Positions 33,348 through 62,586 of a stretch of DNA of 64,000 nucleotides are shown in pieces. Position 1 is the first letter of the stretch; every line of letters starts with the position of its first letter. Below the pieces are notes generated by a model, which had not been told where the DNA came from, did no database searches, and saw only the letters and a list, made by a program, of their open reading frames with translations. The DNA is from Lepidodermella squamata. Taxonomy: Eukaryota; Animalia; Gastrotricha. The position numbers and the translations under genes are program-made. The stretch is taken from assembly GCA_047495785.1 (NCBI GenBank), contig JBLDXI010000046.1, positions 434,001 through 498,000 on the forward strand. Direction: 5' to 3'.

Positions 33348-35063
33348 ATGGTCGAAATTCTGCGATTACAGGTACAGGAAAAATATATAAAAATTCTTCA
33401 AAAATACTGATTTATTCCATTTTTCCAGAGCCTCCTTCTGCTTCTTTTTATTGCAGCACTAGAGCTATTTAGCAGCGGAAAAGGACAGTATGGCCGGGTA
33501 CAGATCAGCCTATCATCAAGTGAGTAATTTCCCATTTTTTTATAATTTTTTGAAAATTCGATTTTTTCAAGACTGTTCATCGCCGCAAGCAAAGTGTGCT
33601 GACAACGAATACTGCGAGTCGTTTACAAAAATTGTTTTCAATTTTATTCAGTAAAATAATTTAATTTAATTAACAATTATTATTTTTTTACAGGATCCGC
33701 CTTGTAAATCGAAAGCTTGCATGTGCAATGGCTGTTCTTGGAGAAGCGGCAAAATTTGCAAACAAGGTAAAACATTTTCGCCAAAATTCATGAATTGAGC
33801 GAAAATCAAGATTAAGATTAAGAATTTAAATTTAATGAATTTTTCATTTTTGAAATTTGGTGAAATTTTTTAAAAAATATTGAAATTTTATTCAGTTTAA
33901 GGAAATTTAATTCCAATTTTTTGAAAGTGAAGCCAGCGATATCAGAGCTGGATGTGACTCGGATACAATTATTACAGTTTCATGATTTTCAATTTTTTGA
34001 AATTTCATTGAAATATTTTTGAAATTTAAGAAATTCATATTATTTTCAAGAACTTTTAAAATGAAAATTTTAAGCCTCAATCAATTAATTTTTTTAAACT
34101 AAAGCCAAATTTGCCAACGATATTGGAGATCGATGCGACTCAGATACAATTATCACAGTGCCCGGCGCAATTTGTTCGAACAACCGCGTCAATTGTTCGA
34201 TAGGCGAGTCTGCAAATGGCTGCAGCATCGGCAACTGCACCGAGCCAGCCGACGGCTTCAAATGCCACGAATCCACCTTAATCTGCGAAAATGACTGGGA
34301 ACTTTTCGATGAAGCCCTGCGAATCTGCCGGCCGCGTAAAATCGGCGAGCCGTGCCGTAGCGATTCTGATTGTTCAAAGCCAAACAGCCATTTGCTGATT
34401 TGTTCTGCCGATGCTAAATTATGCTCGTGCGACGTGACGCAGGGTGTCCGGACTTGGTTGATGGTTCTTAACGAATTCAACCAATTCGCGCTGGTTGATC
34501 AATGCGTGGCAAAGGGAGCGGTTGTTAACATCACGAAGGGCGGCGAGTGTAATACGGAAGAAGGGACTGAAAAATTTCTGACCTCAATTACGGCGAAATT
34601 TTGCGATCAAAACACGTTTTGCATGAAATGCCCGGGCGAAAAAACAGCACTTTGCCGTAAGTTAACAAATCTCCTGCAATATTCTGTGAATTTTCAAAAT
34701 AAAATTTTTGACATTTTCAAAATTAAAATTTTCGAATTATAAATTTTCAAAATTTTCGAAAATATTTTTTTCGATAGTGAATTAATTTTTTAGCTTTTAA
34801 AAAAATTAAGAAAATTACGAAAAAGTGCTTTTAATTTCAAAAATTGAGATGACGCATTTTTCTATTTCCGCAATTTTTTTTTCGTGCAATTATTTTATTT
34901 TGTTTCTATTTCAGGGTCAATATCACCGGAATTTCTCAAACCGGCCGTGCTTTGTGGCCGCAAGCAGTTTCGCTATTCATCAGCAATAAGGCTATCAAAC
35001 TTTAATTCCAACTTCGCAACTTCAATTTTTCTTTATTTTTTTCATCCACTCTTTTTAAATTAA
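33348..35063 (+). CDS. Cys-rich secreted/GPI family, member A (divergent, 6 exons)
   Basis: Exons encode MVEILRLQ / SLLLLLFIAA.. / CSSPQAKCADNEYCESF / DPPCKSKACMC.. / large Cys-rich exon ending LC / ..CGRKQFRYS plus hydrophobic tail. Same exon plan and phases as members B-F. Confidence 0.75.
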
Positions 35064-35396
35064 AAATATGAAAATAAATTTTTAAGAAAAAACTGAAAAA
35101 TTGCTCAGAAAATGTGTCTCATTTGCAATGTCAAATTCTCTTGATATCTGACGCGATCGATCAAGAAATCGAAACATAATTGCGCGGTGAATTTTACGCC
35201 TCGGCTCAATGACGTCTTGGAGATGTTTTCAGGAGAAATTAATCCAGGTAAAAAATAATCGATAATACAAGCCACACACTTGACAAAATGCCGTGATTGC
35301 TACCCATTAGTCTGGCTATATGCGACGGAAGACGCTGGAAAAGAAACACGTCCGTTAATTCTAGAAACGACAAAAACATAATTTTGTTCTAGAAAA

Positions 35397-37578
35397 ATGC
35401 GATTTTTCGAATTTTTCGCAATTTTTGTAATTTTTATTTTTGAATTCTGCGACTCGCAGTCATCGATTCCAACCCCGCCGCCTCCAACGCCCTGCCAGGG
35501 TCAAACCACGGCTGTTTCGGAGCAAGATGTTGCTAATAAATATTTTAAACCCTACGGAAAATGGCAGAGGCCGAAGCGAAACGGCAGCGAAACTGTCAAA
35601 GTCTTCATGGCATTTGTTTTCTCATCAATCGCCGACATAGTAATTCCGGAAAATTTCATAATTCATCGAAAAATTATTAAAAAATTTTCAGCATGAAAAG
35701 GAGAGAAAATTGGAAATTTCTGGATATTTAAGCATCGTAAGTCTTTATTTAAATTATTTCCTTATTTAAATTTTCCTCAACAGAGATGGATGGATGAGTT
35801 TAGGGTGTGGAAAAATGATACGCCCTATAATTGCATCGACTACGTCGGTAAGACTTTTCGCGGTTTTTTTCCATTTTTTTCGAATATTTTCTCGATTAGT
35901 TTTGCCTGCGAATGAAGTTTGGCTGCCTGATATAGCTGTTATGAACTCGGACGATCGGTATACTTTGATGAGTAAGGAAAGCGAGAAAGTTCGCGTCTAC
36001 TCGAATGGCTACTCGGTCTACAGTCCTGGTGGCAAAATTGCACTCTACTGCGAATATGACCTCACTTTGTAAGAAAAATCTCAACATTTTAAAATAATCA
36101 TAACAATAATTTCCAACAGGTTCCCTTTGGATACGCAAATGTGCGCTTTGGAGCTCGAAAGGTTACTGAAATTTCAAATTTTAAATTTTTTCATCAATTT
36201 TTTTGAAATTTTGAAATTTCAAGCTTTTCAATTTTTAAAATGTAATTTCTTCGATTTTAGCTGGCGATATACTCGGCAGTACATGAGCTTCTATTTTTTT
36301 GCCAATATCACGCGAAAATATTTCAAAGAAAACGAACAATGGGAACTGGTCGATTTTTCGCAAGCTAAGATCGACGTTACCTACCTGGACCCGGCTAATT
36401 CATTCGATCACATCGAATTCTACTTCACCATGCGGCGAAAAGTCATGTATTACATGTGAGAAAATTCCAAAATGTTGCCGGAAAAATTTGATAATTTTTT
36501 TTTTAATTAGGATGAATGTGTTGATTCCGAGTCTTTTGATCGCCCTGGCTCATTTGGCTGTTTTCGCGGTGCCAATAGGCGAACCTGAGAAAATTCACAT
36601 CTCATTTACTTGTCTCCTCGCCTATTCAGTATTTCAGGTCATGGTCATCGAAGACATGCCGAGGTTTAATTAGGAACACAGCCGATTAAATTTCAAATTA
36701 TGGATTTGTCTTTCCAGGTCAAGCGATCACATTCCGATAATTTCTATCTATATCGATCTGCAAATGGCCTACATTTCAGTATCAATGGTGAGAAATAATA
36801 TCCGAATTTTGTTGTTTGAAAATTAAAAAAAATTGAAATTTCAACAAAATTCTTTGGATTTTTTTTAAATTCTTCGGAAGCTTGAAATCTTTTAATTTGA
36901 AATTAATTTTAATTAATCAAAATCATCCGCCCGAAAATTTCAGATTTTAAAATTGAATTTTCCCTGATTTTAAACTTGAATTTTAAATTTTCCCTGATTT
37001 TAAATTTGAATTTTTGTAAAATCTCAATTTTGTAAAATTTCCCATGTTTTGCGTAGCTTGGAGAGGGCATTGCTATGTACGCTCTTCACATAGGCGCCCA
37101 TAAAGGCGTCCGATCCGATTGTTACGTCCCGCGATGGCTACTCAGCATCACAAAAATCATCGCTAAACTGCTACTTCTCGACTATAATCTACCTGAAAAA
37201 TCGTCAAAATTGCCGCAAAAAACTGTCGGTAATCAGGTCATATTGAGCCATATCGATTACAAGGGCGAAATGTGGCACGAATCTCCCATGCCATCAACCA
37301 CCTGTTGCTGCGAGCGGAAGAGAAGGAAAAGCCGTTCGGATTCTAAAAAAATTCGAAGCGTTGACGATTACGAGCCTAATAATCAGGCTAATATTGAGGA
37401 TGAAAACACTTCAAGGAACACTACGTCATCTCAGCTGGAAATCCGCGAGCTTGAATGGCAGCTGGTTGCTTTCACCCTGGAAAGACTTGTCGGTGTTACG
37501 TACCTGTTAGCTATCATTTTAACGCCGATTGTCATTTTTCTCATCTATCCTAATACTTTACCAAACCGGCATAAATAA
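35397..37578 (+). CDS. nAChR-like Cys-loop subunit (non-alpha), intron-rich
   Basis: Signal peptide, VWLPDI, Cys-loop CEYDLTLFPLDTQMC split by an intron, SWRY loop B, MRRK before M1, PEK before M2, M4 ERLVGVTYLLAIILTP; many short GT-AG introns. Confidence 0.88.
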
Positions 37579-37663
37579 TTATCTCAATTTTTGGAATATT
37601 TTCAATATTTTTCTATTTTTATTGAATAATTTTTCTAACAAGCCGTAATAAAAATTGAATGAC

Positions 37664-38900: not shown

Positions 38901-39149
38901 TGTGTGTACTGCGTGCGTAGAAGGAGAAGAATTTCTTCGTGAGAGGAAAAAAAAACTAGCAAAAACTCGAGGTCATAATACATCCTAGCGTGTGGTTATT
39001 TGAGCAGTTTTTATGAGTCACCGCATGAAAAAACACAGAAATACCCGGTTAGTGAATAAGGTATTTTTCTAAGTAGATTCTAAGTAAATTTTTCTAAGTT
39101 TAGTTTCTAAACTCTAATAACCCAAAAAGGGCACGTTTAGGAAAAAGAG

Positions 39150-39420
39150 CACTGAACAGCAAGAGCGTCAAAACAGCAAATTTCCCATTTCGTGACAAAA
39201 CAGCAAAAGCGTCATAACAGCAAATTACCAATTTCGCGACAGAAAGGCATAAGTGAACAAAAACAAAAGCGACGAAACAGCAGAAGTGACGAAAAACAAA
39301 AGCGACAAAACAGCAGAAGTGACAAAACGGAAAATTTTACGTTTGGCGGCAAAACAGCAACAGAACAATGCTGTTTTGTCGCGAGTAATTTTGCTGTTTT
39401 GTCGCTTTTGCTATTATGGC
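39150..39420. repeat. Degenerate GCGACAAAACAGC repeat array with inverted copies (MULE-like subterminal relic)
   Basis: Repeated GCGAC(A/G)AAACAGC units followed by GCTGTTTTGTCGC; same motif as 23020-23170. Confidence 0.6.
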
Positions 39421-40037: not shown

Positions 40038-41815
40038 ATGCGAAATAACCTGAGATTTGAGCGCCTAATGCATCCAGTTTGTATTCGACCCTAAATCCTA
40101 TGAATTTCGTTTCAAAAATTGTATAATTTAGGCTCTGCTTTTGCTACTGATCTGTCACTTCGCAATTGCTGATCTGTTCTCAACAAGTAACATAAGATTT
40201 TATTGTTCCAAGTTTTGTTTGATTTGCAAGGTTTTAGCCTGCTCCAATCCAAGCGACAAATGCGGCGATAACGAAAGATGTGAAGCATTTGCTGGCTTTG
40301 TAAATTTTTATGAACCAAGCTTTTCAAAAGGCGATCATTGACCTTTTGTTCATTTCATTTCAGGACCCGCCCTGCAAAACTAAAGCTTGCATTTGCAACG
40401 ACTGTGCTAATCGAAACACATATGGAAAATGCATTCCAAGTAAGATTTCCTAGAATATGAGATGCCTTAGAGCGATAATTCAGCTCGAATTTTGACTTCT
40501 ACACATTTCTGAGATTAAGTTTCCAGCGCTAATTGTTGCCATTTTCGATAGATTGTGGCCCATTAATGAGCCTGGATTATAAGATTTTTAGCTTTTGAAG
40601 TATCGGAAAGATACTTGGAATCGATATCGGCTTGGCCTAAGATTATGGGGAAGAATAACAATTTCTCAAATTGTTGCAAGAGAGCTTAGCTTTAGGGTTA
40701 GCTAGTTGACATTCCTTCGTAATGCTGTCGAACATCCTAATTTTCAGCTAAATACATCTATAACCTCGACGACAATTGTGCGCAAAATTCGGCGACCGAA
40801 GTGATAATTATTCCGAGGGCTTACTGCAAGGAGAACAACAAAGTCGCCTGTCTACTGGACCCCGAGGGCTTCAACGGTTGTTCAGCTGGCACCAATTGCA
40901 CGCGGCTTCAATCGCGAATGCCAAAACGGGTTGTGCCTATGCACGGGCCAGAACGAGCGTTTCGACTACGACAAGGGTGGATGTCGCGAGCGGAAGTTGG
41001 GTGACAAATGCGAAATTCAAAACGACTGCGCTTCTCCAGATGGCAACAACATGATGACCTGTACGAGTGGGAAGTGCGCCTGTGACACGACGAAAACAAA
41101 TGAAGTTCAGGTTATGGTGTGGAACGATGATACGGACATTTTCGAGACGCAGTCGATTTGTTTGAACAAGAAGGCTACGGCAAATGTTAAGCAGGGCCAG
41201 CCGTGTACTGTTGCGATTGTTCAAAATAATTATGCCGAGGATTCGTTGGCTTGCGACAAATCACTCGTCTGCTTCGCGTGTCCAGAAGACAATTCAAAGG
41301 GATTATGCCGTAAGTTTTGAAGTATGAAGTATGATTCGGTCTGGGAAGAATTATGATCCAAAGTTGAAACTTTTCTGTAAAAGCATTTTTCCATAGAAAC
41401 TTTTCCCTGCCTTGAAATTGTCCCTTCGTTTCGGGTGAGGTTCTAAACAGAATTCTCTCGTTAACAATCACCGGGAAATTCCATAGTTTGACATTATTGG
41501 AAGTGTTTTGGAGGATTCACAAACCTCAAGCACGCAACCTGGGAGACCTCGAAAAATGCAAATTTTGTCCTAGTGGTGATACTGAAATTGCTCTGTTTGG
41601 TTCCAGGAAAAGTCGTCCAGCCGTTCCAAAAAACCGCAGAACAATGTGGATGGCGAGCTTTTGTATTCAATGGTACTTCACGACCGCTGGATAACGCACC
41701 AAGATACGTCCCGCCTGCAAAGGTGAAATCTGGGGCATTGAAACATCATGCCGGGGCCTTCATTACGCTATCGCTTATGAGTATTGGCTATTTATCACAG
41801 ACCACGAGCCTTTGA
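40038..41815 (+). pseudogene. Cys-rich family member B, frameshifted
   Basis: Same six-exon plan. In exon 5 the frame breaks at about 40900: GCSAGTNCT in one frame, GFNRECQNGLCLC in the next, with the SxDxC residues of the paralogs missing. Confidence 0.7.
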
Positions 41816-43781: not shown

Positions 43782-46700
43782 ATGCTATCGAGCATTATTC
43801 TGGTGAGATGCTTTGAAAAGAGCAATTCATATTTGTTTTATGTTTCCGCTCTGAAAAAACAGATGTTGTCGCTTGCATCGAGCGCAATTGGAAAACCCAT
43901 GGGGAAAAGTAAGTCTCATGAGGTAGTTTAGAGTTTCTTTTTGGAAATGTCTTTCGGATTATTAATGGTTAATATTTACTATTAATGCTTAGATTGCACG
44001 GATGCCTCGGTGCAATGCCCAAAGTATCAAAGATGCGAATCCTTCTCGACTTTTGTAAGAAACATTGTGGAGCCACTACATCGTTGAGTTTCAGCACGCG
44101 CGCTAATTGGTCAACGGTCTTTGCATTTTGGCCGTGCAATCGACTAATAAGTTGAAATTTATTAGAATTTATTAGAAATTTATAAGTTTAAAACTGTCTC
44201 CAAGATTTCGACGAGAGAATGCAAAATTAATACATATTTCCAATTTACTACGGTGAATGATGCAGTACAGTTTATGAGACTACCCAAAAGGCACAATTGC
44301 AACCCAGCCTTCTCGGGTTAAATCATTGATCCACAGTCTTGGTACCAGTCTCAAATTACAGATCATCTTGAATACAAAAAATTGTATACTACGTTCCAAT
44401 TCATGGTTCCAACTATTTCAAGTCCTTCAAATCCAAGTTTAGTCCAAGATGGAGTCAAAAGGGAAAGGTTAAAAAGGTTTAAAACGCAATTACTAATTGA
44501 TGTTACAAATAGAAAACAGGTCCAAGGTTTATAATATCTTTCGATCAGATTTTCGATAGTCGCAAATTTCAACCAAAAAAATAGAGCGGAGTCATAGAAA
44601 CGACCCATTGACCAATTAGCGTGAACTTTCAGGAGGTGGTTTCACAATGAAGGCTAGGCAAATTGCCTGCTTGCCTCCTGCTTCTCTACTTGACTTTTCA
44701 AATCTAGGATCCACCTTGCAAGTCGAAAGCTTGCGTTTGTGAAGACTGTGCTAAGCGAATCGACGATCTGGATATCTGTCTTCCGGGTACGTTTTTCCCA
44801 TGGCATCGGAAAAAATAGATAACCATTTCTTTTATCGAAGTCACTTACATCAACTCCTTATACGACCCATGCCTCCCTGGCGTAGTCGTAACCATACCAG
44901 GCGCGGCATGTTTTTCCGAATCGAACAAAACGCAGTGCATCGTTGACAATCTGGGAAATGGCTGCGCCGCTCGGACACGATGTGGCAATGGAACTCGTGG
45001 TTTTTGCGATGGTTACAACCGCGAGTGCGTGCAAGATTGGTGCGTTTGCGTGGAGGAGAACGAGGTTTTCGACTACAACATTGGCGGCTGTGTCGCTCGT
45101 CAAATCGGCGATTTATGCTCGAAGGATTCTGAATGCGCTATTACGCGCCAATATGGCAAGAAGAACTACTTGGTCTGCCGCAGTGGCAAATGCGCCTGCG
45201 ATACGGAGGTTTCTGTTGAAACTGAGTACCGTGATTACAATTCTGAGTGGAATACCTACGATGTCAAGCGGGCGTGTCTGCACAAGAATGCCACGATTAA
45301 CCTAAAACAGGGCGAGAAGTGCGACCTTCCTGAGAACAGCCGGCCCCGGATGTGGATGGACTTAAGATGGCAATTTAACTGGGATGACGGCACGGTTCGT
45401 GTTTGCGAAAAATCACTGATTTGCTTCGCTTGTATGGAAGATGGCAGTGTGGGGTTGTGCCGTGAGTTTTGAGGTGGCTTTTCAATGTGAATTCGAACCT
45501 GGGTGGTTTATTTACCTTTTTAATGTGTTTCTGCTTTTTTGACCATAATTTTTAACTGGATTTCAACTTTTATAACCGCCTGAGTAACAGTGCTTTTACA
45601 GGCGAGGGGGAGGGGGCTCCGGCTGCATTTGAAAACCACCAGTTTGAAGGACGACGTGGCGTCAATGCGGCAAATTTAATAGATTTTTAATAATCATATT
45701 ATTATAGACGCTGCTTGGTGGGTAAAACGACGTTAGGCAGCTTTCAAAGTCTGTCTTGGATGCTGCGTTACTGCTAAGATACATGCTGGGATGTCCACTT
45801 ATTAACAGGCGTTGGTTATTTGGTTGTTAAATCATAAACAAATAACCGGGGAAAAACTTGAAAACCACCCTGTGAAAACTGCAGTAAATACCGTGAACAG
45901 CTCTGATTTATCCGCACTAGGCAAGTTCAATGGACCCATCGGAAAGTCGGCTGATCAATGCGGGCGAAAGAAATTCGTCTATTCCGGCCCGAAGCCATTA
46001 GAAAGTGCTCCATTCAAGAGCCTTTCCAGGCAACGCCTGATCAAAAGTGAGCGCACAACAATGCACTGTATAGTATCGTTAACAAAATGTTCCATTAATT
46101 AATAGATTGCACAGATGCCTCGGTGAAATGCCCACAAAATCAAAGATGCGAATCCTTCTCCACTTTAGTAAGGAATTTCTTTGATTCGCCAATTACCTGC
46201 TCTCTCTGTTTACAACCCTAAATAATCTAGGACCCAGCGTGCACGTCGAAAGCTTGCGTTTGTAACGACTGCGCCCTGCGACCATTTGAATATGGCGATG
46301 AATGTGTTCCAAGTATGTTTTTTTCTATATAAAACCGTACAATGTTTCTTTTCTTCACCGTGCAGCTACCTACATCAACTCCTTAAACTCAACCTGCACA
46401 AATACCCATGGCGAGGTTGTAACCATACCCGGCGCGGCCTGTCATTTGCAATCGAACAAAACCCGGTGCCTTAATGGTACCCAGGGCAATGGCTGTAATA
46501 CTGGGGCAAGATGCTCATCTAACGAAGATTGTTTTGGCAGCGGCCGCATTTGCGAGCGAGGTTGGTGCGTTTGCAAGTTGAAGTACCAAGTTTTCGACTA
46601 CAACACCGGCAGGTGCGTCGAACCTCAAATCGGCGATTCGTGTTCAAATAACACCGACTGTACTATTTCGCCCGATATTAAGAACTTTTTGGTCTGCCGC

Positions 46701-47278
46701 AGTGGCGAATGCGTCTGTGATACGAAGTTTTCTGTTGAAACCGAGTACCGTGAATACAATCAGGAGTGGAATAGCTTCGACGTCAAGCGTGCCTGTATTA
46801 GTGAGGAGTCCACTTTTAACCTGAAACAGGGCGAGAAGTGCGACGTTCTCGTAAACAGCCGGAAGTGGAACTTGAAGTGGAGACCGGAGTGGACTTTTAA
46901 TAGGTACTTGCGGCCCTGGGAAGACAGCAAGATTCGGGTTTGCGAAAAATCACTGATTTGCTTCGCTTGCATAGAAGATGGCGACGGGGGACTGTGCCGT
47001 GAGTTTTGAGGTGGCTTTTAAATTCGAATATGACCGTACCATTAATAATAGGCAAGTTCAATGGAACCATTGGAAAGTCGGCTGATCAATGCGGGCGTAA
47101 AGAATTCGTCTATTCTGGCCCGAAGATGTTAGAAAGCGCTCCGACTAGATCCGTTACCAGGCAACGCCAACTGACAAGTATGCACAACGATACCAGCGCC
47201 GGAAAGAACGGCGTGACTTCGGCTGTGCCCTCAGCCACAATCCTGACGGCTGTCCTGCTCGTCGTTTCAGCTTTATAG
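43782..47278 (+). CDS. Cys-rich family member C, two tandem modules
   Basis: 21-nt first exon MLSSIIL, signal exon, module 1 (exons near 43993, 44709, 44841, 45920), spliced through 46047 into module 2 (46105, 46231, 46366, 47052). Ends SGPK..SATILTAVLLVVSAL. Confidence 0.8.
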
Positions 47279-48407: not shown

Positions 48408-50150
48408 TACCGTATTACCGCGCTTCCTACGACATGTCGATATATTTTTTTGCAACAACGACATGTCGATATAATTCAGATATATCGACACTGTCGAAAG
48501 GCGAGGTTTTTTTTCTTTAGCGGATGAATGAGTGAAGCCAACCTAATATCGACACTCGAGCACGTTGTCACCACGTGGCACGTCTACATTTTTTATATGT
48601 CAGTTTTGAGCTTGACAAAAATAACGCTGGTAATGATAAGAACTTGAGTAAGCAATAATGCCGTCATCTGAAGAGTGGTCATCAGACGATGTTCTCTCTG
48701 TATCCTCTTCCTCGTCATCATCATCATCGTCATCATCGTCGTCGTGTTCAAAGTCGCCACGTGATATAGCTACACCATCAGCTGAAATGGCGGCCTTTCG
48801 GTTCAATCCTGGGACCCCTACAACACCAACTGAGGTTCATAAAAGGAGCCGGCTTAACCGAACCTTAATGAAGAAGGAACAGGTACTAGCGCTCAACGGC
48901 TCTTCCGAGAAACTTATCCCGAGAAATCGCCGCAATCATTCAAGGCATCTAACGGTTGGTTATGGCGATTTAATTATCGTTTAGATGTGGCTAGTAGGCG
49001 AACAACGTCAGTTGGGCAAAAAGTACCCGATAACGCACCGATTCTTGCTCAAAATTTCATCGAATTTTGCAAGAATAATGGCCTTCACGCGACTGGTCGC
49101 CATTTGATAGGCAACATGGACGAAGTGCCGTGCTGGATGGATATGCCGTCTAGCCGCATAGACGATATAAAAGGCATCAAAGTCGTCCGTGCCCGTACGA
49201 CCGGGTACGAAAAACTCCGATATACGGCCGTTCTTGCTATTCTTGCTGATGGCACCAAATTACCACCCATGGTAATTTTCAAAGGCCTGAAAAAGGCGCC
49301 TAGAGGTACGTTATTTAGCTGGCGTGCGAGTGAGTAAACAAATAACACGCGTCACATGTTACGTAACTCAGTCGCGCTCGCCTCTCCCGCATGTATACAC
49401 TTAATACTTAATCCTCTTATCGCGCAGGTAATTTCAACAAGAATGTAGTGGTAGAGGCCAAGAAAAGTGGGTCAATGGACGCACCATTTATCAAAGTATG
49501 GCTCGACCACGTCTGGAACAAGCGGCCGCGCGGATCGGCTTTTTTCGACCAGACTTACAGTTGGCTAGTCTTCGACTCGGCTAGCTCGCACTGGCCGAAG
49601 AAAAAACAAGCGGCCCTGACGCTGAGTTGAAAAAAGCCGCACTAATAAGGTGGTCATCCCCGGCGGAATGACGCCTATTCTCGAGCCGCTGGACGTGGCT
49701 ATAAATCGTGCCTTCAAAGCCGCCCTCTCCAAATTGTGGAAAAATTGGCTTCGTAATGGCGAGCGGACTTACACCAAAACCGGCAAGCGCCAGCGAGCCT
49801 CATACGAGACCATCATCAACTGGGTGGCCGATGCCTAGTCTTCCATCAGCCCAGAGATGGTGCAATTGTCTTTTGACCAGTGCGGTATCACTTCCGACAA
49901 GCCCGTTCGCCTTCACACCCGGCTATTGTCAGTTTTGGGGATGGCCTCGGCTGAAGCCGTTGTTGAAGAAGAGCCGACTGGCATGTCCGACCACGAAACC
50001 GACGTTTCCCAGTCAGATGAGGACGAGGATGATGATGACGATAATTAAGGAGATGTTGAAGTGTGAAAAAGAGTAATAACAGGGTAGTATCGATATAACT
50101 CAGAAATAACGACAGTGTCGAAAAGCGAGGTTTTTTATTTTTTCCCTAAA
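48408..50150 (+). mobile_element. pogo/Tigger (DDE_1, POGK-like) transposon relic
   Basis: IGNMDEVP, TTGYEK.RYT.VL..ADGTKLPP..IFKG, LVFDS, IPGGMT..L.PLDVAINRAFK. Stops at about 49628 and 49836. Left end TACCGTATT; related subterminal motifs at about 48466 and 50090. Confidence 0.85.
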
Positions 50151-50899
50151 ATTTACAACAACGAATCCAAATAGCAATCCGTACAGTAACAAGATGCCAT
50201 CGATCCAGCAAACAGGTGAGTCTTTTTTCAAACAATTGCCTAACAACTTGCCGTCTCAAATATTAGGCCCGGATGCAACTAATTCCGGTCTTCGCCAACG
50301 ACGCCGAAATGTGCTTTCGTCACTTACAGATGAAGAAAGAGCCGCCGTTGCTACGCAAGCCGAAAGGACGCCGTTTACCGAGCGCCAAACTGAAAGTACC
50401 CCTACCCCTATATGTATCGGTATATTATTAGTTCATCAACAGTGTACCTCGAAACACTCCATTTTTCCTATATACGTTTTGAATCGTTCGAAATTTTCCA
50501 CTGCAGCATGAAAATTCTCAGCAATTTCCTGATGTAACCCAGGCCTATTCGTTGGTGTTCTGATGAAAGGGCTCGTCTCCTGAAATATGCCGCAAATGAT
50601 TATTACATCACACTTCGTAAATAGCTATTATTATTCGTAATGCCCATTTGATGTTGGGGGAATTCATAACTGCTATGTTGTTACATGTTGTAGTATGTTG
50701 TAGAGTTCGTTCATTAAAAAATTATCTTCTCTTTTACTTTGGCCTGGTATTTTATTAGTAATCCTCTTAAAATGTTCCAGTTGCTAATGTTCCAGTTTCA
50801 TAAAATACAGCTTGGAACTCCACATAAAGCCACGAAATCAGAAGAAAAATGATCGCCAAATCGTAAATTATCGATGAGATTTCTCAGCAATTATAAAAA

Positions 50900-51956: not shown

Positions 51957-54900
51957 ATGATATCGAGCATTATTCTGGTGAGATGTTTTGAAAAAGTAAT
52001 TCATATATTTGTTTTATATTTCCTCTCTGAAAAACAGATGTTGTCCCTTGCATCGAGCGCAATTGGGCAACCCATGGGGATAAGTAAGCCTCACGAGGGA
52101 TGTAGTTTATTTTTGGATATGTCTTTTGGATTTTTTGATGGATTAATATTTACTTATATTAATATTAATTGTTAGATTGCACGGATGCCTCGGTGCAATG
52201 CCCACAGTATCAAAGATGCGAATCATTTTCAACTTTTGTAAGAAACATTGTGGAACTATAAAATCGTTGAGCTTCAGCAAGCGCGCTGATTGGTCAACGG
52301 TCGTTACATTTTGGCCATGCAATCGACTAATGAATTAATTGAAAAATGGCATCGCCAAATTAATTGCATGGTATCCAATGACTAGACCCCGCATGATAAT
52401 CTTGGCTAAACTGCAGCAAAACAAAAACTTGTAGCAACATTTAATGGATCGCACGACCGACATGTTTCATGCCAGTCGTTGAAACGACCGATTGACTAAT
52501 CAGCGTGTGCCAGAGAAATGGCATTGGTTCCATAATGAACGCAAAATGTCTGCTTTTCTACTTGAGACTTATCAAATCTAGGACCCACCGTGCAAGTCGA
52601 AAGCTTGCGTTTGTGAGGACTGTACTAAGCGAAAAGGTTTCCCTCACTCATTTGACAGGTGTCGTCCGGGTATGTTTTTCCCACGCCCCACAGCATCGGA
52701 AAAATAACCATTTCTTTTATCTCAGTCACTTACATCAATTCCTTAGACGACTCCTGCATCCCCGATAGTCCTGATGCTGTTCTAACCGTTACAGTACCCA
52801 ACGCGAACTGTAATGAACAGAACAAACCCGAGTGCATCTTCGACAGGCAAGGAAATGGCTGCGACGCTGGGACACGATGCGGCAATGGAACTGATGGTTT
52901 TTGCGATGGTTACAACCGCGAATGCGTGCAAGATTGGTGCGTTTGCGTGGAGGAGAACGAGGTTTTCGACTACAACTACGGCGGTTGCGGTGCACGTCTC
53001 ATCGGCGATTCATGCTCAAAGGATTCGGAATGCGCTGTTATGCCCCAATATGGCAAGAAGAACTACTTGGTCTGCCGCAGTGGCAAATGCGCCTGCGATA
53101 TCGAGGTTTCTGTTGAAACTGAGTACCGTGAATACAATGAAGAGCGGAACAGCTTCGATGTCAAACGTGCTTGTTTGCATAAGAATGCCACGATTAACCT
53201 AAAACAGGGCGAGGAGTGTGACCTTCCCGAGAACAGCCGGGAATGGAGATGGATGGGCGGCAAATGGGAATGGAACTGGCAAGAAGGCACGGTTCGCGTT
53301 TGCGAGAAATCACTTATTTGCCTCGCTTGCATCGAAGATGGCGACGTAGGCTTGTGCCGTGAGTTTTGAGGTTGCTTTTCTAAGTCTATTTAACCCTGGG
53401 TGGTTTATTTACTTTTTTTATGTTTTTGCTGCGTTGGTTATATCGTTAGCGACGTTGAATAACTCGGATTTAGGCTTGTTTACAGCATTTTCGAAGCGAC
53501 GGGTGACAAATAAAATGCGGTGTTTTTAGCGTGAATGAAGAGGCAAAACAAAAGACTGTTTCCTTGTCACCTCGCACTTTGAAACGATGTAAACAAGTCT
53601 AAATCCGACTTACTCAAGGTCGCTAACGATATGGTTGTTAAATCATAAATAAATACCGGGTGAAAACAATCAAAAACCACTCTGTGAAAACTGCAGTAAA
53701 CACCATGAACAGCTCTGAGTTAACAGTACCATTAACAGGCAAGTTCAATGGACCCATTGGAATGACGGCTGAACAATGCGGGCGTAAAACATTCGTCTAT
53801 TCCGGTCCGAAGTCCTCGGAGAGTGCTCCATTCAAGAGCTTTTCCAGGCAACGCCTGATCACAAGTGAGAACACAGTGATGCAATGTATAATTTCGTTAA
53901 TAAAATTGTCTATTAATTAATAGATTGCACAGATGCCTCGGTGAAATGCCCACAAAATCAAAGATGCGAATCCTTCTCCACTTTTGTAAGGAAGTTCGCT
54001 TCGCGAATTACCTGCTTCTCTATTCACAACCCTAAATAATCTAGGACCCACCGTGCACGTCGAAAGCTTGTGTTTGTAACGACTGCGCTCTGCGACCATT
54101 GGAATATGGCGATGAATGTGTTCCAAGTTTGTTTTTCTCTTTATAAAACCGTAGAATTTTTCATTTCTTCACCATGCAGCTACTTACATCAACTCCTTAA
54201 ACTCTACCTGCACATCCACCCCTGGCGAGGTTGTAACCATACCCGGCGCGGCCTGTCATTCACCATCGAACAAAACCCAGTGCCTTAATGGCACACAGGG
54301 CAATGGTTGTAATACTGTGGCAAGATGCTCATCTGACGAAGATTGTTCTGGCAACGAACGCATTTGCAAGCAGGGATGGTGCGTTTGCAAGTTTAAGTAC
54401 CAGGTTTTCGACTACAACACCGGCAGGTGCGTCGAATGACAAATCGGCGATCCGTGTTCAAAAGACACCGACTGCACTATTGAGTACAATCTCAGCACTT
54501 TCTTGGTCTGCCGCAGTGGCAAATGCGTCTGTGAGAAGTATTCTGTTGAAACCGAGTTCCTTGAATACAATCAGGAGTGGAATAGCTTCGAGGTCAAGCG
54601 GGCTTGTATTAGTGAGGAGTCCACGTTTAACTTGGAACAGGGCGAGAAGTGCGACGTTCTGTTAAACGGCCGGAAGTGGAACTTGAAGTGGAGACCGGAG
54701 TGGGGTCTTAGCCGGTACTTGGAGCCCTATGAGGACAGCAAGATTCGCCTTTGCAAAAAATCACTGATTTGCTTCGCTTGCATAGAAGATGGCGACACGG
54801 GATTGTGCCGTGAGTTTTGACGTGGCTTTTCAATGTGAATTTGACTGTACCATTAATAATAGGCAAGTTCAATGGAACCATTGGAAAGTCGGCTGAACAA

Positions 54901-55089
54901 TGCGGCCGTAAAGAATTCGTCTATTCTGGCCCGAATCCCTTAGAAAGCGCTCCGACCAAGTCAATTTCTAGGCAACGCCACCTGACAAGTAAGCACAAAG
55001 ATACCATTGCCGGAAAGAACGGCGTGACTTCGGCCGTGTCCTCCGCCACAATCCTGGCTGCTGTCTTGCTCGTCGTTTCAGCTTTGTAG
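51957..55089 (+). pseudogene. Cys-rich family member D, two modules, premature stop in module 2
   Basis: Colinear with member C. TGA at 54437-54439 where member E has CGA (GRCVE-R-QIGD); the rest of the frame and the splice sites are intact. Confidence 0.75.
53440..53632. mobile_element. Small MITE in an intron of member D
   Basis: TIRs ATATCGTTAGCGAC..GTCGCTAACGATAT; absent at the matching position of member C (about 45820). Confidence 0.75.
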
Positions 55090-55339: not shown

Positions 55340-55420
55340 AAGCAAACGATGTTCAGGTCATGACGTGGAACGATGATACTGACGTTTTCGAGACCTAGTC
55401 GATTTGTTTGAATAAGGCGT
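55340..55420 (+). pseudogene. Fragment of a member-B-like exon
   Basis: GTTCAGGTCATGACGTGGAACGATGATACTGACGTTTTCGAGACC..TCGATTTGTTTGAATAAG matches about 41105-41170 and contains a stop. Confidence 0.7.
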
Positions 55421-57027: not shown

Positions 57028-58266
57028 ATGCTAACAAGAATCATTTTGGTGAGACTTTTCAACAAAATTGAATATTTTTCTTATTTCCTTCCTGAAAATC
57101 AGACGTTGTGTCTTGCATCGAGCGCATTGGGGCAAAAACTTTCTACAAGTAAGCCCCGCGATGCTTTATAGAGTTGCGTTGACATCATTCTTTAATTGAT
57201 AGATTGCACAGATGCCTCGGTGAAATGCCCAGATAATCAAAGATGCGAGGCCTTCTCCACTTTTGTAAGAAATTTCGCTTTGCAGGCAATTCGCTTTTCT
57301 ATTCAAAAACTTAATTCTAGGACCCACCATGCAAGTCGAAGGCTTGCGTTTGTAACGACTGCGCTGTTCGAGGTGAATATGGCGATGATTGTGTCCCGAG
57401 TATGTTTTTTCTTTCGCTAGATAGATTCGCAGAATTTCTCATTCCTTTCATCTTAGCTACCTACGTCAATGCCCTAGGCGCAGCCTGCAATACGCCTGGT
57501 GCTGTTATAACCATACCCGCCGCAGATTGTGATAAGCCAGCGAACAAAGCCCGATGCCTTCTTAGTACCCAGGGCAATGGCTGTGATGCCGGGACGAAAT
57601 GCTCATCCAACGATCAGTGTGCTGGCTACGACCGCACTTGCGAGCAAGGTTGGTGCGTTTGCAGGGAGAAGTTCCAGGTTTTCGACTACAACACCGGCAG
57701 GTGCGTCGAACGACAAATCGGCGATTCGTGCTCGAACGACACCGACTGCGCTATCACACGCGATAAGAAGAACTACTTGGTCTGCCGTAGTGGCAAATGC
57801 GCCTGTGATACGGCCGCTGGTGTTGAAACCGAGTACCGTGAATATAATCAGCTGTGGAATACCTTCGATGTTAAGCGTGCTTGTTTGAACAAAAAGGCCA
57901 CGGTTAACGTGAAACAGGGAGAACGATGTGACCCAGTCGTCACCAACATCAACTATGAAACAGCTAAGGTTTGCGAAAAATCACTGGTCTGCTTCGCCTG
58001 CATGGAAGATAGCGGGCTGTGCCGTGAGTTTTTAAGGATGCTCTTTGAAATCTGAAGTTATCTCGATTCTTCCAGGCAAGTTCAACGGACCTATTGGAAA
58101 GTCGGCTGATCAATGCGGGCGACAAAAGTTCGTGTATTCAGGTCAAAAGCCGTTGGATGATGCTCCGATCAAGACTGCCTCGGGCAAGAGCGGTGCGACT
58201 GTCATCGCATCCTCGGTCTCGGCGCCAATCCTTGCTGCTTTCTTGCTCATTGTTTCGGCTTATTAA
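57028..58266 (+). CDS. Cys-rich family member E, single module
   Basis: Six exons: MLTRIIL / TLCLASSALG.. / CTDASVKCPDNQRCE / DPPCKSKACVC / large exon / KFNGP..CGRQKFVYSG..ILAAFLLIVSAY. Confidence 0.85.
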
Positions 58267-61200
58267 AAACTTTATTGGTTTCCAAAGCATCAGATGTCAG
58301 AAGAATATGACGATGCTTTCAGGATTGCAATTCCCCAGCTTTACACATTACCGACTGAAATAACTCATCTGATAAATAAAAAAGTTATTTTTGAGTTCAA
58401 CGTTAACTGGATTAGAAGGGCGCGAAGGCCTCAACCGTTCTGCAACACCTGAGATGCGATTTCAAACAACACGCTCAACCTTTCATTATTCTTGACTGTT
58501 ATCAGGTTTTTGGGCATGCCCGCACTATACGAGCGTGATATCTGCTCATTCAGGAATACCCGGTCCGTTTTTGCTAATAGGGACAACCCGTTATAGATGT
58601 AGGTGAATCAAGGCCGGCGGATTCAATTATATGTGGTCAAGGGTCAAGGGACCCAACAGTTGCGCGTATGGGTGGATGTGAGCTACTCCAAAATTGCCAA
58701 CATTCGATGGTAGTGACACCAGAAATGCGTCTCATGGTTTAATCCAACAAAAGAGCGCAGCCTACCGAAATGAGTCGTGTTAAAAGCGTTTGTTAATATC
58801 ATCTATCCATTTCACTTACGTCATATAATTAACAAAAAACATCAGTGAAGTAAAAAGACGAGAAATTAAACAAACAATTCAAGTCGAAGGGCGAAAATGA
58901 AGTGGCGAAAAATGGCAAGTTCAAGCTATGTGATTCATAGGAGCTTTTTTGTTAGCTCTTTGAGACGAATGGCTGACGAGATTTTTTACTTCGCCGCCAA
59001 AACACGCCAAAGTTTTTCCCATTTTTTAATGCGAGGACCGGGGCATTTAGTCAGGGGTCAAATCGTAGCGAATACTAGAATAGTAGAGAAGAATTCCGCA
59101 ATTTTTGACAATTTCGGTTGCAAATATCCGACATAGCCGGTCGAATTTGTTGCCATTTAATCAGCGGATGTACCTGAAATTAAATGAGAATATATATCAA
59201 TTACTAGCTACAAAATCGGAGATCGGGTTAATTCGATTCTTAGCTTGTAAGCTTTTCTTAATAATCCGAGAAATTTCCAAAAAATTATAATAAATTTTAG
59301 AATTATGAATTTAAATATTTGAGGAATTTTTCCCATGAAAACGAGCGATATCAGCACATTTCGAAATTTTGAAACGATAAGACCTGGTTTTTTTCGTAAG
59401 ATGTAAACTTCTGCTTTCTTCAGTTACCTAAAAAGCGCGATTTTTTCCCGCGACCTCGAACGGCTAGTAGCCCATGTTTCCGTGCAGCTTCGGTACAGCG
59501 CACCGACATGCACTAGGCGCTGTTTACGAGTTGCGTCATGCAAAGTGACAATCTCCAGTATACATTGCTTTCCGCAGTATCACGTCTGGGACCAATAAGC
59601 TACGGCTAGTACTGAACGCTAGTACCGCTCCGGCTACCTAGGTTACAATAGTAATTATCTGAAATAATCAATATTTAAAATCAAGTAGCATATATATGGC
59701 GAGAAAGCAACACATCTACTTCTTCTTCAAGCCCCATAGGGCACATCCAATGCCACCAAAAGTTTGTTATTTTTGCGAGTTTTCTGAGCTGCGAACTGTC
59801 GTGAAGGTGGGCCAGATGAACTGCCATCTGCCCATTCATCTGGCTGTCGTTTAAGGCAGAGAGCGAATCTCTACCAGTTACATCGGTCCATACGGTGAGG
59901 TCGGTCAAGGACCACAGGGGATTTCGCGGTCCTACTTCGCTCTTTGTTTTAATCCTTTCTTGGCCGAATTATTTATCTCCGGTAGAAAAACTGTTTTAGG
60001 GTCGAGGGGTTATAGGGGTCCCTGATCGCGATTTTGAAACCCGCTTCTCTCTATCCATCACCGTAAAGGCTGTTCAAAAAGTGATCGAAATCGCCCTATT
60101 GGCCCAGCTGATTTCAGCACATTTTTCAAACACCCTAGTTTCAGCTAGTTTCAATTTTCAAGTTCTAAGCCTCTCCTTCAACACTCCTTGACAATCTTCC
60201 TTTTTTATTTCGAGGAACAAATTAGTTAAAACCAGTTTTCAAAGTCAGAATTTTTATCAGTTTTCAGCAAAGTCAGCTTTTTCACACACTATGGCGGACA
60301 CGATATCATTTTTAGTTTGATCAATAAAAGATGAGAAACCACCGTAATGTCGAAATTTCAATCTCAGGTAGACTATTTTAAAACAGCTACAATGTGCTGA
60401 CCATGCCAAATAACGGCGCGTTCGTTTGAAATTCTTATAGTTAACATCGAAAAGTCGTATTCCTTAAACGGGTGATGAACAATTCATCAAATTAAAATTA
60501 CTGCAGATTTTCAAAGTCTAAATTCCAAAATCGCCCTTATGTATACGGCCATGAAAGGTTGAAGACGATCACAACTTCCACGACCATTAAAATTTGCAAG
60601 ATTGAGCGTTCTCTTCAAGAATTGCTATTCCGAGTAGGGAAACAAATAATTGAAATCAAATGTGGAGGCTTAGTTTGAATTTTACGTTGCAAAAAAAATT
60701 ATGAATGAATTTTAGAAGAATAATTAGGTCAGCTCAAGGCGCAGGATAGCAATTATCAAGATTTTCAAACCGAATTACTTCTCGGGAGTCGTAAAAATGA
60801 ATTTCGGTCGCTGTCTTTAGGTGTTAAAGGAAATTACTCGTTTGTTTAGGAAAGATATTTTTCGTCTACAGAAGTTTTTCCAAGGTTAAGATTTTGTACA
60901 GTTTGTAAAGAAAAATTCGAAAAATTGTTTTTAAAAAATATGGTATCGGCGTTCTATGAAATAATGTTTTTTGCAAACTGTTGATAAGCCGTTACTTAAT
61001 GGCAAAAAAAAAACTTTGATATACATCTCATTTGTCATTTTTTACTGCTCCGTGAATCTGTAATAATATATATGTTCGCTCACACACCGTAGAATGCGTG
61101 TTTTTTACTTAAGAAGGCATAAAAAAATAACAGAAAATGCGCCGGCCGGTGGAATGATGTGGAAAGATATTCGGGCGTGATGATGATACAGGTGTGAGGC

Positions 61201-61383
61201 GTACAACAACTTATATAACTGGCGAGCATGCACCGGGGCAGTTGAACTCTTCGTGCAAGAATGTCATAATGCCGCTACTATAAAATTGCTTTATTTGCTG
61301 TAGTACGACAGTCTTGCTTTTTACACGCCGAAGATTTATTTCTTCAACAATTTACGTTTTCGACTTTTCTTTAGCCAAGCAAC

Positions 61384-62586
61384 ATGCAATCGAGCATTAT
61401 TCTGGTGAGATTTTTCTGAATGATTCAAATACTTTTTAAATTTTCTACCTGAAATTTAGATACTGTCCCTTGTATCGGGAGCACTGGGACAAAAGCTGTT
61501 CTCAAGTAAGTCTTTCCCCGATGCGTAACAGAGTTTCGTTAATGTAATTTGTTAATTGATACTAGATTGCACGGATAATTCTGCGAAATGTCCACAAAAT
61601 CAACGATGCGAGCCCTTCACGACTTTTGTAAGCACGCTTATTATCTATCTACTCTATTTACACATTCTCAATCCAAATTGTAGGACCCACCATGCAAGAC
61701 GAAGGCTTGCGTTTGTAACGATTGCGCTCGAGGGTACATGGCCGATGATTGTGTCCAGGGTATATTTTCCTTTCTCAAGAAAATCCCGCAGATTTTATCA
61801 TTTCTTTCATCTCAGCAACCTACGTCAATTCCTTGAACGCAGCCTGCAATATGCCTGGCGGTATTTTAACCATACCCGGTTCGTTCTGTGATATTAAGGG
61901 GAACCAAGCTCTGTGCCTCACTAGCCCTAAGGCGAATGGTTGCGAAACTACTACACAGTGCTCATCTAACGAAGATTGTGGAGCCACCCGAAAATGCGAC
62001 AATAAAGTGTGCGTTTGCTTTGAGGCTTATCAGGCTTACGACTACAACACCGGCCTGTGCGCCGCACGGCAAATCGGTGATTCATGCTCGAATGACGCTG
62101 ACTGCGCTATTACGCGTGGTAGTCCGAACTATTTGGTCTGCCGTAGTGGAAAATGCGCCTGTGATACGGCCGTTAGTAATGAAACCGAGTACCGTGAATA
62201 CAACGACGACTGGAACAGCTTCGACACCAAGCGAGCTTGCTTCGGCAAGAATGCCGCGCTTAACCTGAAACAGGGTGAAAGATGCGACCAAAAACCGAGC
62301 AATGATAACTACCTAGCGCCTAAGGTTTGCGAGAAGTCACTGGTATGCTTTGCTTGCATGGAGGATAGCGGACTGTGCCGTGAGTTTTTGAAACGGAAAT
62401 GTTTAATATCTGAGAATTGAATTCTTTCAATTCTTTCCAGGCAAGTTCAACGGACCCACACAGCCCACTGGAAAGTCGGCTGATCAATGCGGGCGCAAAA
62501 AGTTCGTCTATTCGGGCCAGCCTCGTTTGTCCTCCGGCTCAGCATCCGTCATAGCTGCCGTTTTGCTCATTGCTTCTGCTTTTTGA
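61384..62586 (+). CDS. Cys-rich family member F, single module
   Basis: Same six-exon plan: MQSSIIL / ILSLVSGALG.. / CTDNSAKCPQNQRCE / DPPCKTKACVC / large exon / ..SASVIAAVLLIASAF. Confidence 0.85.

What the first reader, a model, noticed from the sequence alone, without database searches (positions are those of the whole stretch)
33348..62586. Tandem array of an uncharacterised Cys-rich, probably GPI-anchored surface protein family
Seen: six loci (A-F; eight modules) over ~29 kb, all on the plus strand, with one exon plan: a tiny start exon (21 nt in C-F), signal exon, C..C..C exon, DPPCKSKAC.C..C exon, a large exon with EB-like C-S-x-D-x-D-C..C..G.C.C units ending CF.C..LCR, and a CGRK.F.YSG exon with a hydrophobic tail. 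More than 20 Cys per module are conserved while the loops vary. I do not recognise the family. Inference: a birth-and-death surface recognition, adhesion or defence family.
Basis: partly seen in the sequence, partly recalled or inferred. Interest (0 to 1): 0.75.

Follow-up and report, generated by a model that had tools for sequence, protein, structure and literature searches.

The report
EB-like cysteine-rich surface protein gene array
A microscopic freshwater animal (almost certainly the gastrotrich Lepidodermella squamata) carries a head-to-tail row of genes for small, disulfide-packed, probably lipid-anchored surface proteins built around two EB-type modules. The genes are real and turn over quickly, but nothing shows an immune-like role, and the same family fills other parts of this genome.

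Summary
Window 33348-62586 holds six plus-strand genes (eight modules) with one GT-AG exon plan, consistent phases and 30 scaffold cysteines per module (28 in locus A). C and D are two-module genes. The family is not unrecognisable. The large exon contains two EB-like modules (Pfam PF01683; 22 of 29 genome paralogs match at E<=0.01). After these comes a beta-hairpin/Cys-rich extension, then a CGRK exon with a hydrophobic, uncharged tail typical of a GPI signal. A profile search of 1.84 billion proteins found about 45 full-domain relatives. All are unnamed metagenome-assembly proteins from other species, except one uncharacterised annelid protein. No solved structure matches. Birth-and-death is supported. 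A diverged twin of the array on contig C29 has an extra two-module gene. The window copy has a frameshifted B and a nonsense codon in D2, and the twin has a transposon in D1'. dN/dS is below 1 for every whole exon and pooled region (0.03-0.63); one loop is about 1 and not significant. So recognition or defence is unproven. The family has at least 74 exon matches genome-wide, and this scan had already reported it on another contig. Joined spliced models were not searched; exons were searched one at a time.

The parts
33348..35063 (+). Locus A, a divergent single-module gene. Exons: 33348-33371, 33429-33519, 33572-33633, 33694-33766, 34105-34656, 34915-35063.
   Evidence: GT-AG at all introns; CDS 951 nt; no internal stops; 28 Cys. 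The exon 3 donor GTTTTC is weak. dN/dS against the C29 twin is 0.09. The tail ends ..ATSIFLYFFHPLFLN.
40038..41815 (+). Locus B, a single-module gene that is disabled in this copy. Exons: 40038-40076 (start uncertain), 40132-40186, 40238-40299, 40364-40439, 40748-41309, 41607-41815.
   Evidence: A 20-nt deletion relative to the C29 twin lies near 40900 inside the large exon. It shifts the frame and removes a conserved Cys. The twin is open.
43782..47278 (+). Locus C, a two-module gene (C1+C2) with 10 exons: 43782-43802, 43863-43908, 43993-44054, 44708-44786, 44841-45461, 45921-46046, 46106-46167, 46231-46312, 46366-46998, 47052-47278.
   Evidence: All introns are GT-AG; CDS 1959 nt; no stops; 30 Cys per module. 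The link intron 46047-46105 keeps phase 1. A Trp/Arg-rich insert sits between the 17th and 18th Cys of each large exon.
48410..50156 (+). Decayed pogo-type DDE transposon inserted between loci C and D. It is absent from the C29 twin.
   Evidence: Pfam DDE_1 on ORFs 49448-49627 and 49650-49835, in different frames. The twin has about 300 nt in place of these 1.75 kb.
51957..55089 (+). Locus D, a two-module gene (D1+D2) and a young duplicate of C. Exons: 51957-51977, 52038-52083, 52176-52237, 52582-52669, 52726-53358, 53739-53864, 53924-53985, 54045-54126, 54180-54809, 54863-55089.
   Evidence: It has the same plan as C; CDS 1977 nt. There is one in-frame TGA at 54437-54439 in the D2 large exon, where paralogs and the twin have Arg. 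It is 86-91% identical to C at the DNA level, introns included.
57028..58266 (+). Locus E, an intact single-module gene used as the reference. Exons: 57028-57048, 57103-57148, 57203-57264, 57321-57399, 57457-58023, 58076-58266.
   Evidence: Read base by base and checked. CDS 966 nt. dN/dS against the twin is 0.03. AATAAA lies at 58375. The AF2 model of the large exon has pLDDT 86.
61384..62586 (+). Locus F, an intact single-module gene. Exons: 61384-61404, 61460-61505, 61566-61627, 61684-61759, 61816-62379, 62441-62586.
   Evidence: All introns are GT-AG; CDS 915 nt; 30 Cys. The large exon is identical to the twin's. The tail ends ..SSGSASVIAAVLLIASAF.
57708..57806 (+). Best EB-module match within the E large exon (residues about 84-116: C-x8-C-x5-C-x11-C-x4-C-x-C). 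A weaker first EB-like unit lies upstream, at residues about 24-68.
   Evidence: Pfam EB 22.1 bits, residues 79-118 on profile positions 9-43. hhalign aligns family columns 19-140 to two consecutive EB modules of P0016.
57807..58022 (+). C-terminal extension of the large exon: a long beta-hairpin, a variable loop and a C..C..C cluster. Pfam EB does not cover it.
   Evidence: AF2 on this part alone gives pLDDT 86. No PDB fold match: Foldseek E>=0.8, VIA Z<=2.2. It is conserved in the unnamed relatives and in Dimorphilus P0072.

Best explanation
This is one segment of a large expansion of genes for small extracellular proteins. The expansion looks restricted to a few lineages.

Shown:
- Each module is a rigid scaffold with 30 cysteines. 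It consists of an 8-Cys N-terminal piece (exons 3-4), two EB-type (EGF-derived) modules, a beta-hairpin/Cys-rich extension (the large exon) and a short CGRK piece.
- The genes evolve by birth-and-death. Whole two-module units have been duplicated (C, D, and X' in the twin). The two-module genes look like fusions of an I-like and an E-like single-module gene. Individual members have been disabled by a deletion, a nonsense codon or a transposon.
- Intact members are under purifying selection that is relaxed in the loops.

Inferred:
- A short signal peptide (exons 1-2) sends the protein into the secretory pathway.
- The hydrophobic, uncharged C-terminal tail is replaced by a GPI anchor, so the scaffold is displayed on the outer face of the cell membrane.
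- There it acts as a binding or adhesion module of the body surface or apical matrix, with the variable loops between fixed cysteines as the contact surface.
- In the two-module genes, the first module has lost its own tail to a splice donor, so two scaffolds hang on one anchor.
For: - Exon plan, phases and Cys counts.
- Family reality: 12 invariant Cys in 29 paralogs; at least 74 exon matches in the genome.
- EB homology: Pfam EB in 22 of 29 members, best E 1.9e-8. The family profile hits multi-EB arthropod proteins at E 1e-26 to 1e-20. hhalign to P0016 gives probability 93%. Unnamed relatives pass the Pfam gathering score at 34-54 bits.
- Whole-module architecture is seen uninterrupted in relatives. 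P0014 reads signal, C-x4-C-x-C-x2-C, large domain..CR...C. P0012 and P0189 add a Thr-rich stalk and a hydrophobic end.
- Tails: no charge in the last 15 residues, mean hydropathy 2.0-2.5 in C2, D2, E and F, small residues (S/G/A) just upstream, stop directly after.
- Selection: twin dN/dS is A 0.09, E 0.03, I 0.10; paralogs are 0.24-0.63. By region the range is 0.08 (C-terminal cluster) to 0.54.
- Turnover. The tree places module 1s with I (81/88) and module 2s with E/F (88/86).
Against:
- No signal-peptide or GPI predictor was available, and joined models were not analysed. Secretion and anchoring therefore rest on sequence rules only.
- The tails of A and B are less typical (aromatic, or only weakly hydrophobic).
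- Window members individually stay below the Pfam EB gathering score (15-22 bits against 24.3).
- The function of EB modules is unknown, so 'binding scaffold' is an analogy.
- C1, C2 and D2 have twin dN/dS of 0.6-1.0, which would also fit decay.
Confidence: 0.6

Rival explanations
1. These are structural components of the cuticle, scales or apical extracellular matrix rather than binding or recognition proteins. Many copies would be needed for bulk production and for stage- or region-specific surfaces, and the anchor would be only a delivery step before shedding.
For: The only named relatives of the EB part are multi-EB proteins of arthropods, and the Atlas neighbours are EB/Dumpy-DPY/EGF matrix-type proteins. 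Selection is purifying overall. Relatives have Thr-rich, mucin-like stalks.
Against: The modules are small (about 300 aa) and single or double, not long repeat chains. No Pfam DPY, ZP or chitin-binding match was found. Copy-number variation and pseudogenes would be unusual for essential matrix genes.
Confidence: 0.2
2. This is an immune-type or self/non-self variable recognition family. The loop between the 17th and 18th Cys of the large exon, expanded and Trp/Arg-rich in the two-module genes, would be a diversifying ligand-binding site.
For: The loop sits at a fixed position and varies in length by up to 22 residues. In module 1 its pN/pS is about 1.0-1.1 against 0.34-0.45 for the rest of the exon. 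The array shows tandem layout, copy-number difference and pseudogenes.
Against: No region pooled over pairs has dN/dS above 1. The loop excess is not significant (Fisher p 0.07-0.15) and is absent in module 2. A ratio near 1 fits relaxed constraint. There are no expression or challenge data.
Confidence: 0.08
3. These are lipid-anchored modulators of ligand-gated ion channels, in the manner of Ly6/lynx prototoxins. The idea comes from the Cys-loop receptor gene that lies inside the array.
For: A Neur_chan_LBD/Neur_chan_memb gene lies between loci A and B on the same strand. The weak fold neighbours are small disulfide-rich channel toxins.
Against: Those fold matches have Z<=2.7 and are not significant. 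There is only one channel gene among at least 10 loci.
Confidence: 0.04
4. The array is mostly decaying, non-functional duplicated DNA.
For: B and D2 are disabled here and D1' is disabled in the twin. Twin dN/dS is 0.6-1.0 for C1, C2 and D2.
Against: A, C, E and F have complete open models with intact GT-AG sites. dN/dS is 0.03-0.19 for A, E, G and I. All Cys are kept down to 25-30% identity.
Confidence: 0.05

Closest known systems
EB module proteins (Pfam PF01683), e.g. XP_057337116.1 'prion-like-(Q/N-rich) domain-bearing protein 25' of Microplitis mediator (P0016, 12 EB modules)
   Same: Residues about 18-116 of the large exon align to two consecutive EB modules (hhalign probability 93%, E 3e-7). 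The family profile finds such proteins at E 1e-26. Pfam EB matches 22 of 29 paralogs.
   Different: Those proteins are long chains of 7-16 EB repeats, and no lipid-anchor tail was noted in them. Here there are only two EB-like units, set between an 8-Cys N-terminal piece and a 70-residue hairpin/Cys extension that Pfam does not cover. These are followed by a CGRK piece and a hydrophobic tail. The function of the EB module is itself unknown. One interactome study treats EB, WR1 and Lustrin Cys-rich domains as elaborations of EGF (bioRxiv 10.1101/2024.07.08.602367).
DgyrCDS9126 of the annelid Dimorphilus gyrociliatus (CAD5120560.1; P0072), uncharacterised
   Same: It is the only named-organism protein found that shares the second EB-like unit together with the hairpin and the C-terminal Cys cluster (hhalign probability 94%, E 1e-7, columns 45-189).
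   Different: It is 477 aa with several other EB/EGF-like units upstream. It shares 24% identity. It ends without a comparable hydrophobic tail (sequence).
Unnamed metagenome-assembly proteins (ENA, JGI/IMG, Logan), e.g. P0001-P0015
   Same: They have the full large-exon domain (E 1e-55 to 1e-27). The N-terminal C-x4-C-x-C-x2-C piece, the ..CR.. end and the Thr-rich stalks are visible in single uninterrupted sequences.
   Different: They are 41-57% identical to other paralogs of this genome (contigs C1, C15) and only about 30% identical to the window's subfamily. They therefore come from other species, whose identity could not be established.
Other arrays of the same family in this genome (scan finding s1-368303, 'Tandem array of EB-like surface proteins')
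   Same: The description is the same (30 Cys, EB-type module, probable GPI tail, faster loops, no proof of an immune role). I independently found family clusters on C1, C74, C24, C32, C7, C15 and C20.
   Different: This array is a separate subfamily (25-40% identical to the others). It holds the two-module fusion genes with the Trp/Arg-rich loop.
Ly6/uPAR-type GPI-anchored families (comparison of working principle only)
   Same: They are small, disulfide-rigid ectodomains on a lipid anchor, with tandem lineage-specific expansions and variable loops.
   Different: The fold and Cys pattern are different. No sequence or structure match was found here.

Membership tests
EB module (Pfam PF01683) | Match to the Pfam EB profile at or above the gathering score (24.3 bits) | tested here: inconclusive
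   Window members score 15.3-22.1 bits, E 2e-4 to 0.02, just below the cut-off; A and D2 gave no match. At family level, 22 of 29 paralogs match at E<=0.01 (best 1.9e-8), and the unnamed relatives score 34-54 bits.
EB module (Pfam PF01683) | Reciprocal relation: a profile of the family finds accepted EB proteins | tested here: met
   hmmsearch with A1 hits P0016 (Pfam EB 261 bits, 12 modules) at E 2e-26 and P0021 at 9e-25. hhalign of A1 against P0016 gives probability 93% over 110 columns.
EB module (Pfam PF01683) | About 52 residues with 8 conserved cysteines (as I recall the Pfam description) | tested here: inconclusive
   The best unit aligns to profile positions 9-43 of 52 with six Cys (C82, C91, C97, C109, C114, C116). 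The profile ends are not matched. Disulfide connectivity could not be read from the model.
GPI-anchored surface proteins | N-terminal signal peptide | tested here: inconclusive
   Exon 1 (for example MLTRIIL) and exon 2 (TLCLASSALGQKLST), read separately, look like a short n-h-c signal. No predictor was available and the exons were not joined.
GPI-anchored surface proteins | Hydrophobic, uncharged stretch at the extreme C-terminus with no cytoplasmic residues after it | tested here: met
   C2, D2, E and F have 0 charged residues in the last 15, with mean Kyte-Doolittle 2.0-2.5, and the stop follows directly. B (0.79) and A (aromatic-rich) are weaker.
GPI-anchored surface proteins | Omega site of small residues plus a spacer, accepted by a GPI predictor | not testable with these tools
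   S/G/A clusters lie upstream of the tail (..ASGKSGAT....SSGSAS....SAGKNGVTS..). NetGPI, PredGPI and big-PI are not on hand.
GPI-anchored surface proteins | Release by PI-PLC, or lipid-anchor chemistry | not testable with these tools
   This needs an experiment.
Diversifying immune-type receptor families | Excess of non-synonymous change (dN/dS > 1) in defined sites | tested here: not met
   Nei-Gojobori dN/dS is 0.08-0.54 by region pooled over pairs. The loop is about 1.0-1.1 in module 1 only, with Fisher p 0.07-0.15. No site-model test was run.
Dumpy DPY module (PF21164), a lead from the Atlas | Match to the Pfam profile | tested here: not met
   No DPY match at E<=1 for any exon or at E<=0.01 for 29 paralogs. 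The Atlas scores of 0.78-0.83 are below the trust level.
Knottin / colipase-type small disulfide folds | Structural match well above background | tested here: not met
   The best VIA Z is 2.7 (residues 1-45) for the whole model and 2.2 for the C-terminal part. Foldseek E is at least 0.1.

The most novel reading that the evidence does not exclude
The array would be part of a gastrotrich-type variable surface recognition system. It would consist of lipid-anchored 30-Cys scaffolds whose one expandable, Trp/Arg-rich loop is the specificity site. New specificities would arise through unit duplication, module fusion and conversion between the two diverged copies of the locus, so that individuals or lineages differ in repertoire.
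Probability: 0.08. Interest if true: 0.8.

Novelty: new variant of a known kind. Interest (0 to 1): 0.35.

Why it matters
Gastrotrichs are almost unstudied at the molecular level. This family (at least 74 exon matches and probably around a hundred genes) is one of several large expansions of lipid-anchored surface proteins in the one available genome. It also gives the function-less EB module a defined new context: two EB units with a conserved extension that Pfam and the PDB do not cover. Relatives occur in an annelid and in unidentified organisms. Finally, the two diverged copies of the locus offer a clean case of birth-and-death, with unit duplication, gene fusion and three different kinds of disabling lesion. 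It is useful comparative material but not a surprise. The kind of thing is known, and this scan had already reported the family on another contig.

Tried and rejected
- Word-indexed protein search with the E large exon found nothing, and the same search with the family profile found only one unnamed hit. The tool is too insensitive for this family, so these blanks are not evidence of absence.
- Protein Atlas: EB/DPY clusters at 0.77-0.88, used as a lead only.
- Pfam on the small exons (3, 4, 6), the N-terminal 47 residues and the C-terminal 72 residues: nothing.
- PDB by sequence with the family profile: nothing.
- PDB by fold: the whole large exon and its C-terminal part, with both Foldseek and VIA-align wide, gave only insignificant knottin/colipase/Dickkopf-like rows.
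Neither the source organisms of the unnamed relatives nor any transcript evidence could therefore be obtained.
- Test of whether the Logan/ENA relatives are this species' own transcripts: they are only 41-57% identical to the best paralog, so they are not.
- The bacterial-type promoter scan upstream of E is uninformative for an animal.
- The idea that C2 and D2 are separate genes was rejected. Only 59 nt separate them from the previous module, which leaves no room for signal exons, and a phase-matched donor exists.
- Joined spliced proteins were deliberately not built, searched or folded. All searches used single exons by reference.

Full report
**Rules followed.** Spliced (joined) gene models were not built, searched or folded. 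I took no contig for human.

**1. Observation**

The window is animal DNA with short introns.
- eight DPPCKSKAC-type exons;
- eight large exons ending CFAC..LCR(E/K)F;
- eight CGRK.F.YSG-type exons;
- eight C..C..C exons.

Direct-repeat analysis finds the same units as families of 3 to 8 copies. I read locus E base by base and then checked every locus by script:
- All introns are GT-AG.
- The phases are the same in all loci (0, 1, 0, 1, 1).
- Coding lengths are A 951, C 1959, D 1977, E 966 and F 915 nt, all multiples of three.
- Each module has 3+5+21+1 = 30 scaffold cysteines; A has 28.

C and D are two-module genes. Exon 6 of the first module has a phase-1 GTGAG donor (46047, 53865). It is followed by a 59-nt intron leading to the C..C..C exon of the second module. 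That leaves no room for separate signal exons.

Two members are disabled in this copy:
- B carries a 20-nt deletion near 40900. It shifts the frame and removes a conserved Cys.
- D2 has a TGA at 54437 where all relatives have Arg.

**2. Genome context**

The window is C46:434001-498000 of a 121.2-Mb, 151-contig assembly. Three values agree with the Lepidodermella squamata assembly in PMC11660948:
- Contig C29 is 3,923,985 bp long, exactly the N50 printed in the paper.
- The paper gives 122.8 Mb in 157 contigs.
- The paper gives GC 43.3%.

That paper does not mention this family.

The E large exon finds at least 74 exon matches in the genome. They form clusters on C1 (three regions), C74, C24, C32, C7, C15, C20 and others. 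In C46 the array continues beyond the window, with loci G, H, I and J reaching C46:512.5 kb.

Contig C29 holds a collinear twin of the whole region at 87-99% nucleotide identity. The twin extends more than 100 kb. I could not decide whether it is an uncollapsed haplotype or a recent segmental duplication.

The twin differs in structure from the window copy:
- It has one extra two-module locus (X').
- It has a 2-kb insertion with a hAT-type ORF inside the large exon of D1'.
- It has intact B' and D2'.
- It lacks the 1.75-kb decayed pogo-type element that sits between C and D in the window.

**3. What the protein is**

Pfam gives only the EB module (PF01683). Window members score just below the gathering score, at 15-22 bits against 24.3.

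An alignment of 29 paralogous large exons (A1) has 12 invariant and 4 near-invariant Cys at 32% mean identity. Of its 29 members, 22 match EB at E<=0.01, with a best E of 1.9e-8.

A profile search of 1.84 billion representative proteins with A1 gave 215 hits at E<=1e-3. They fall into two classes:
- About 45 cover the whole large-exon domain. All those looked up are unnamed proteins from ENA, JGI or Logan assemblies. The one exception is an uncharacterised protein of the annelid Dimorphilus gyrociliatus (hhalign probability 94%, covering the second EB unit, the hairpin and the C-terminal cluster).
- The others are long multi-EB proteins, mostly of arthropods, that match only positions about 5-125. 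hhalign to P0016 gives probability 93%.

The unnamed relatives are 41-57% identical to other paralogs of this genome, so they come from other species. Several of them pass the Pfam EB threshold.

Some relatives show the whole module in one uninterrupted sequence. The order is signal, C-x4-C-x-C-x2-C, large domain..CR...C, Thr-rich stalk, hydrophobic end. This supports the exon joins inferred here.

AlphaFold2 models of the E large exon and of its last 72 residues are confident (pLDDT 86 for both). They are all-beta with a long hairpin. Neither model has a significant neighbour in the PDB, and the family profile finds no PDB sequence.

**4. Anchoring**

The terminal exons of C2, D2, E and F end in 13-20 hydrophobic residues with no charge, and the stop follows directly. 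S/G/A clusters lie just upstream. This is the classical layout of a GPI signal.

A and B are less typical. No GPI or signal-peptide predictor was available, so anchoring is an inference from sequence rules.

**5. Evolution**

Nei-Gojobori dN/dS between twins is 0.03-0.19 for A, E, G and I. It is 0.58-1.0 for C1, C2 and D2. Between paralogs it is 0.24-0.63.

By region pooled over pairs, no part exceeds 1. The C-terminal Cys cluster is the most constrained (0.08).

The loop between the 17th and 18th Cys carries a 13-22 residue Trp/Arg-rich insert in the two-module genes. Its pN/pS is about 1.0-1.1 in module 1 against 0.34-0.45 for the rest of the exon. The difference is not significant (Fisher p 0.07-0.15). 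In module 2 the loop does not differ from the rest.

A maximum-likelihood tree groups all first modules with locus I (support 81/88) and all second modules with E/F (88/86). On this tree the two-module unit arose once, by fusion of two different single-module genes, and was then duplicated as a unit (support is moderate).

**6. Reading**

Shown:
- This is a real, partly intact tandem gene family with a conserved 30-Cys scaffold.
- It has EB-module homology.
- It has relatives in other species.
- It shows birth-and-death dynamics and overall purifying selection.

Inferred:
- The proteins are secreted, GPI-anchored and displayed on the surface.
- They have a binding, adhesion or matrix role.

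Not supported by any test here: immune-like diversification, or a link to the Cys-loop receptor gene that lies between A and B.

**7. Comparison and novelty**

The family is a new architectural variant within the EB/EGF-like module world, not a new kind of system. The 70-residue extension and the 8-Cys N-terminal piece are not described in Pfam or the PDB. This scan had already reported the same family on another contig of this genome (s1-368303, with the same conclusion), and the loop on this stretch (s1-374293).

Noticed in passing
window 35397-37578 (+): A Cys-loop (nicotinic-type) receptor gene lies inside the array, between loci A and B. Pfam gives Neur_chan_LBD at 35 bits and a weak Neur_chan_memb match.
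   Followed up: partly
window 48410-50156: A decayed pogo-type DDE_1 transposase, with ORFs in several frames and an acidic/Ser-rich ORF. The block is absent from the C29 twin, so the insertion is specific to this copy.
   Followed up: partly
G000:C29:3860422-3862453 (L038): A 2-kb insertion splits the large exon of D1' in the twin. It has a 267-aa ORF that ends like a hAT-family dimerisation region. That assignment was read by eye and not checked with Pfam.
   Followed up: partly
window 56657-56755 and 61009-61106: An element of about 100 nt lies 290-370 nt upstream of the start codons of E and F. It is 91% identical between the two, whereas the coding exons are about 75% identical. There are only four copies in the genome (E, F and their twins). 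It is a candidate shared regulatory element.
   Followed up: partly
window 29366-64000 and L034/L042 versus C29:3828001-3898000: Identity between the two copies of the region is a mosaic, from 87% to 99%. The F large exon is identical, while A has dS 0.16. This suggests conversion or loss-of-heterozygosity tracts.
   Followed up: no
G000:C46:499688-512548 (L034, L042): The array continues past the window end with four more loci (G, H, I, J). J's large exon appears to be split by an extra intron of about 55 nt.
   Followed up: partly
G000:C29:3832845-3835552 (L035): The twin has about 2.7 kb between A' and the Cys-loop receptor gene that has no counterpart in the window copy. Its content was not examined.
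   Followed up: no
proteins P0008, P0011, P0012, P0018, P0031 and their cluster members: Unnamed ENA relatives belonging to different clusters report the same longest-contig lengths (13549, 13377, 50267 nt). The family is therefore probably in tandem arrays in that other, unidentified species too.
   Followed up: no
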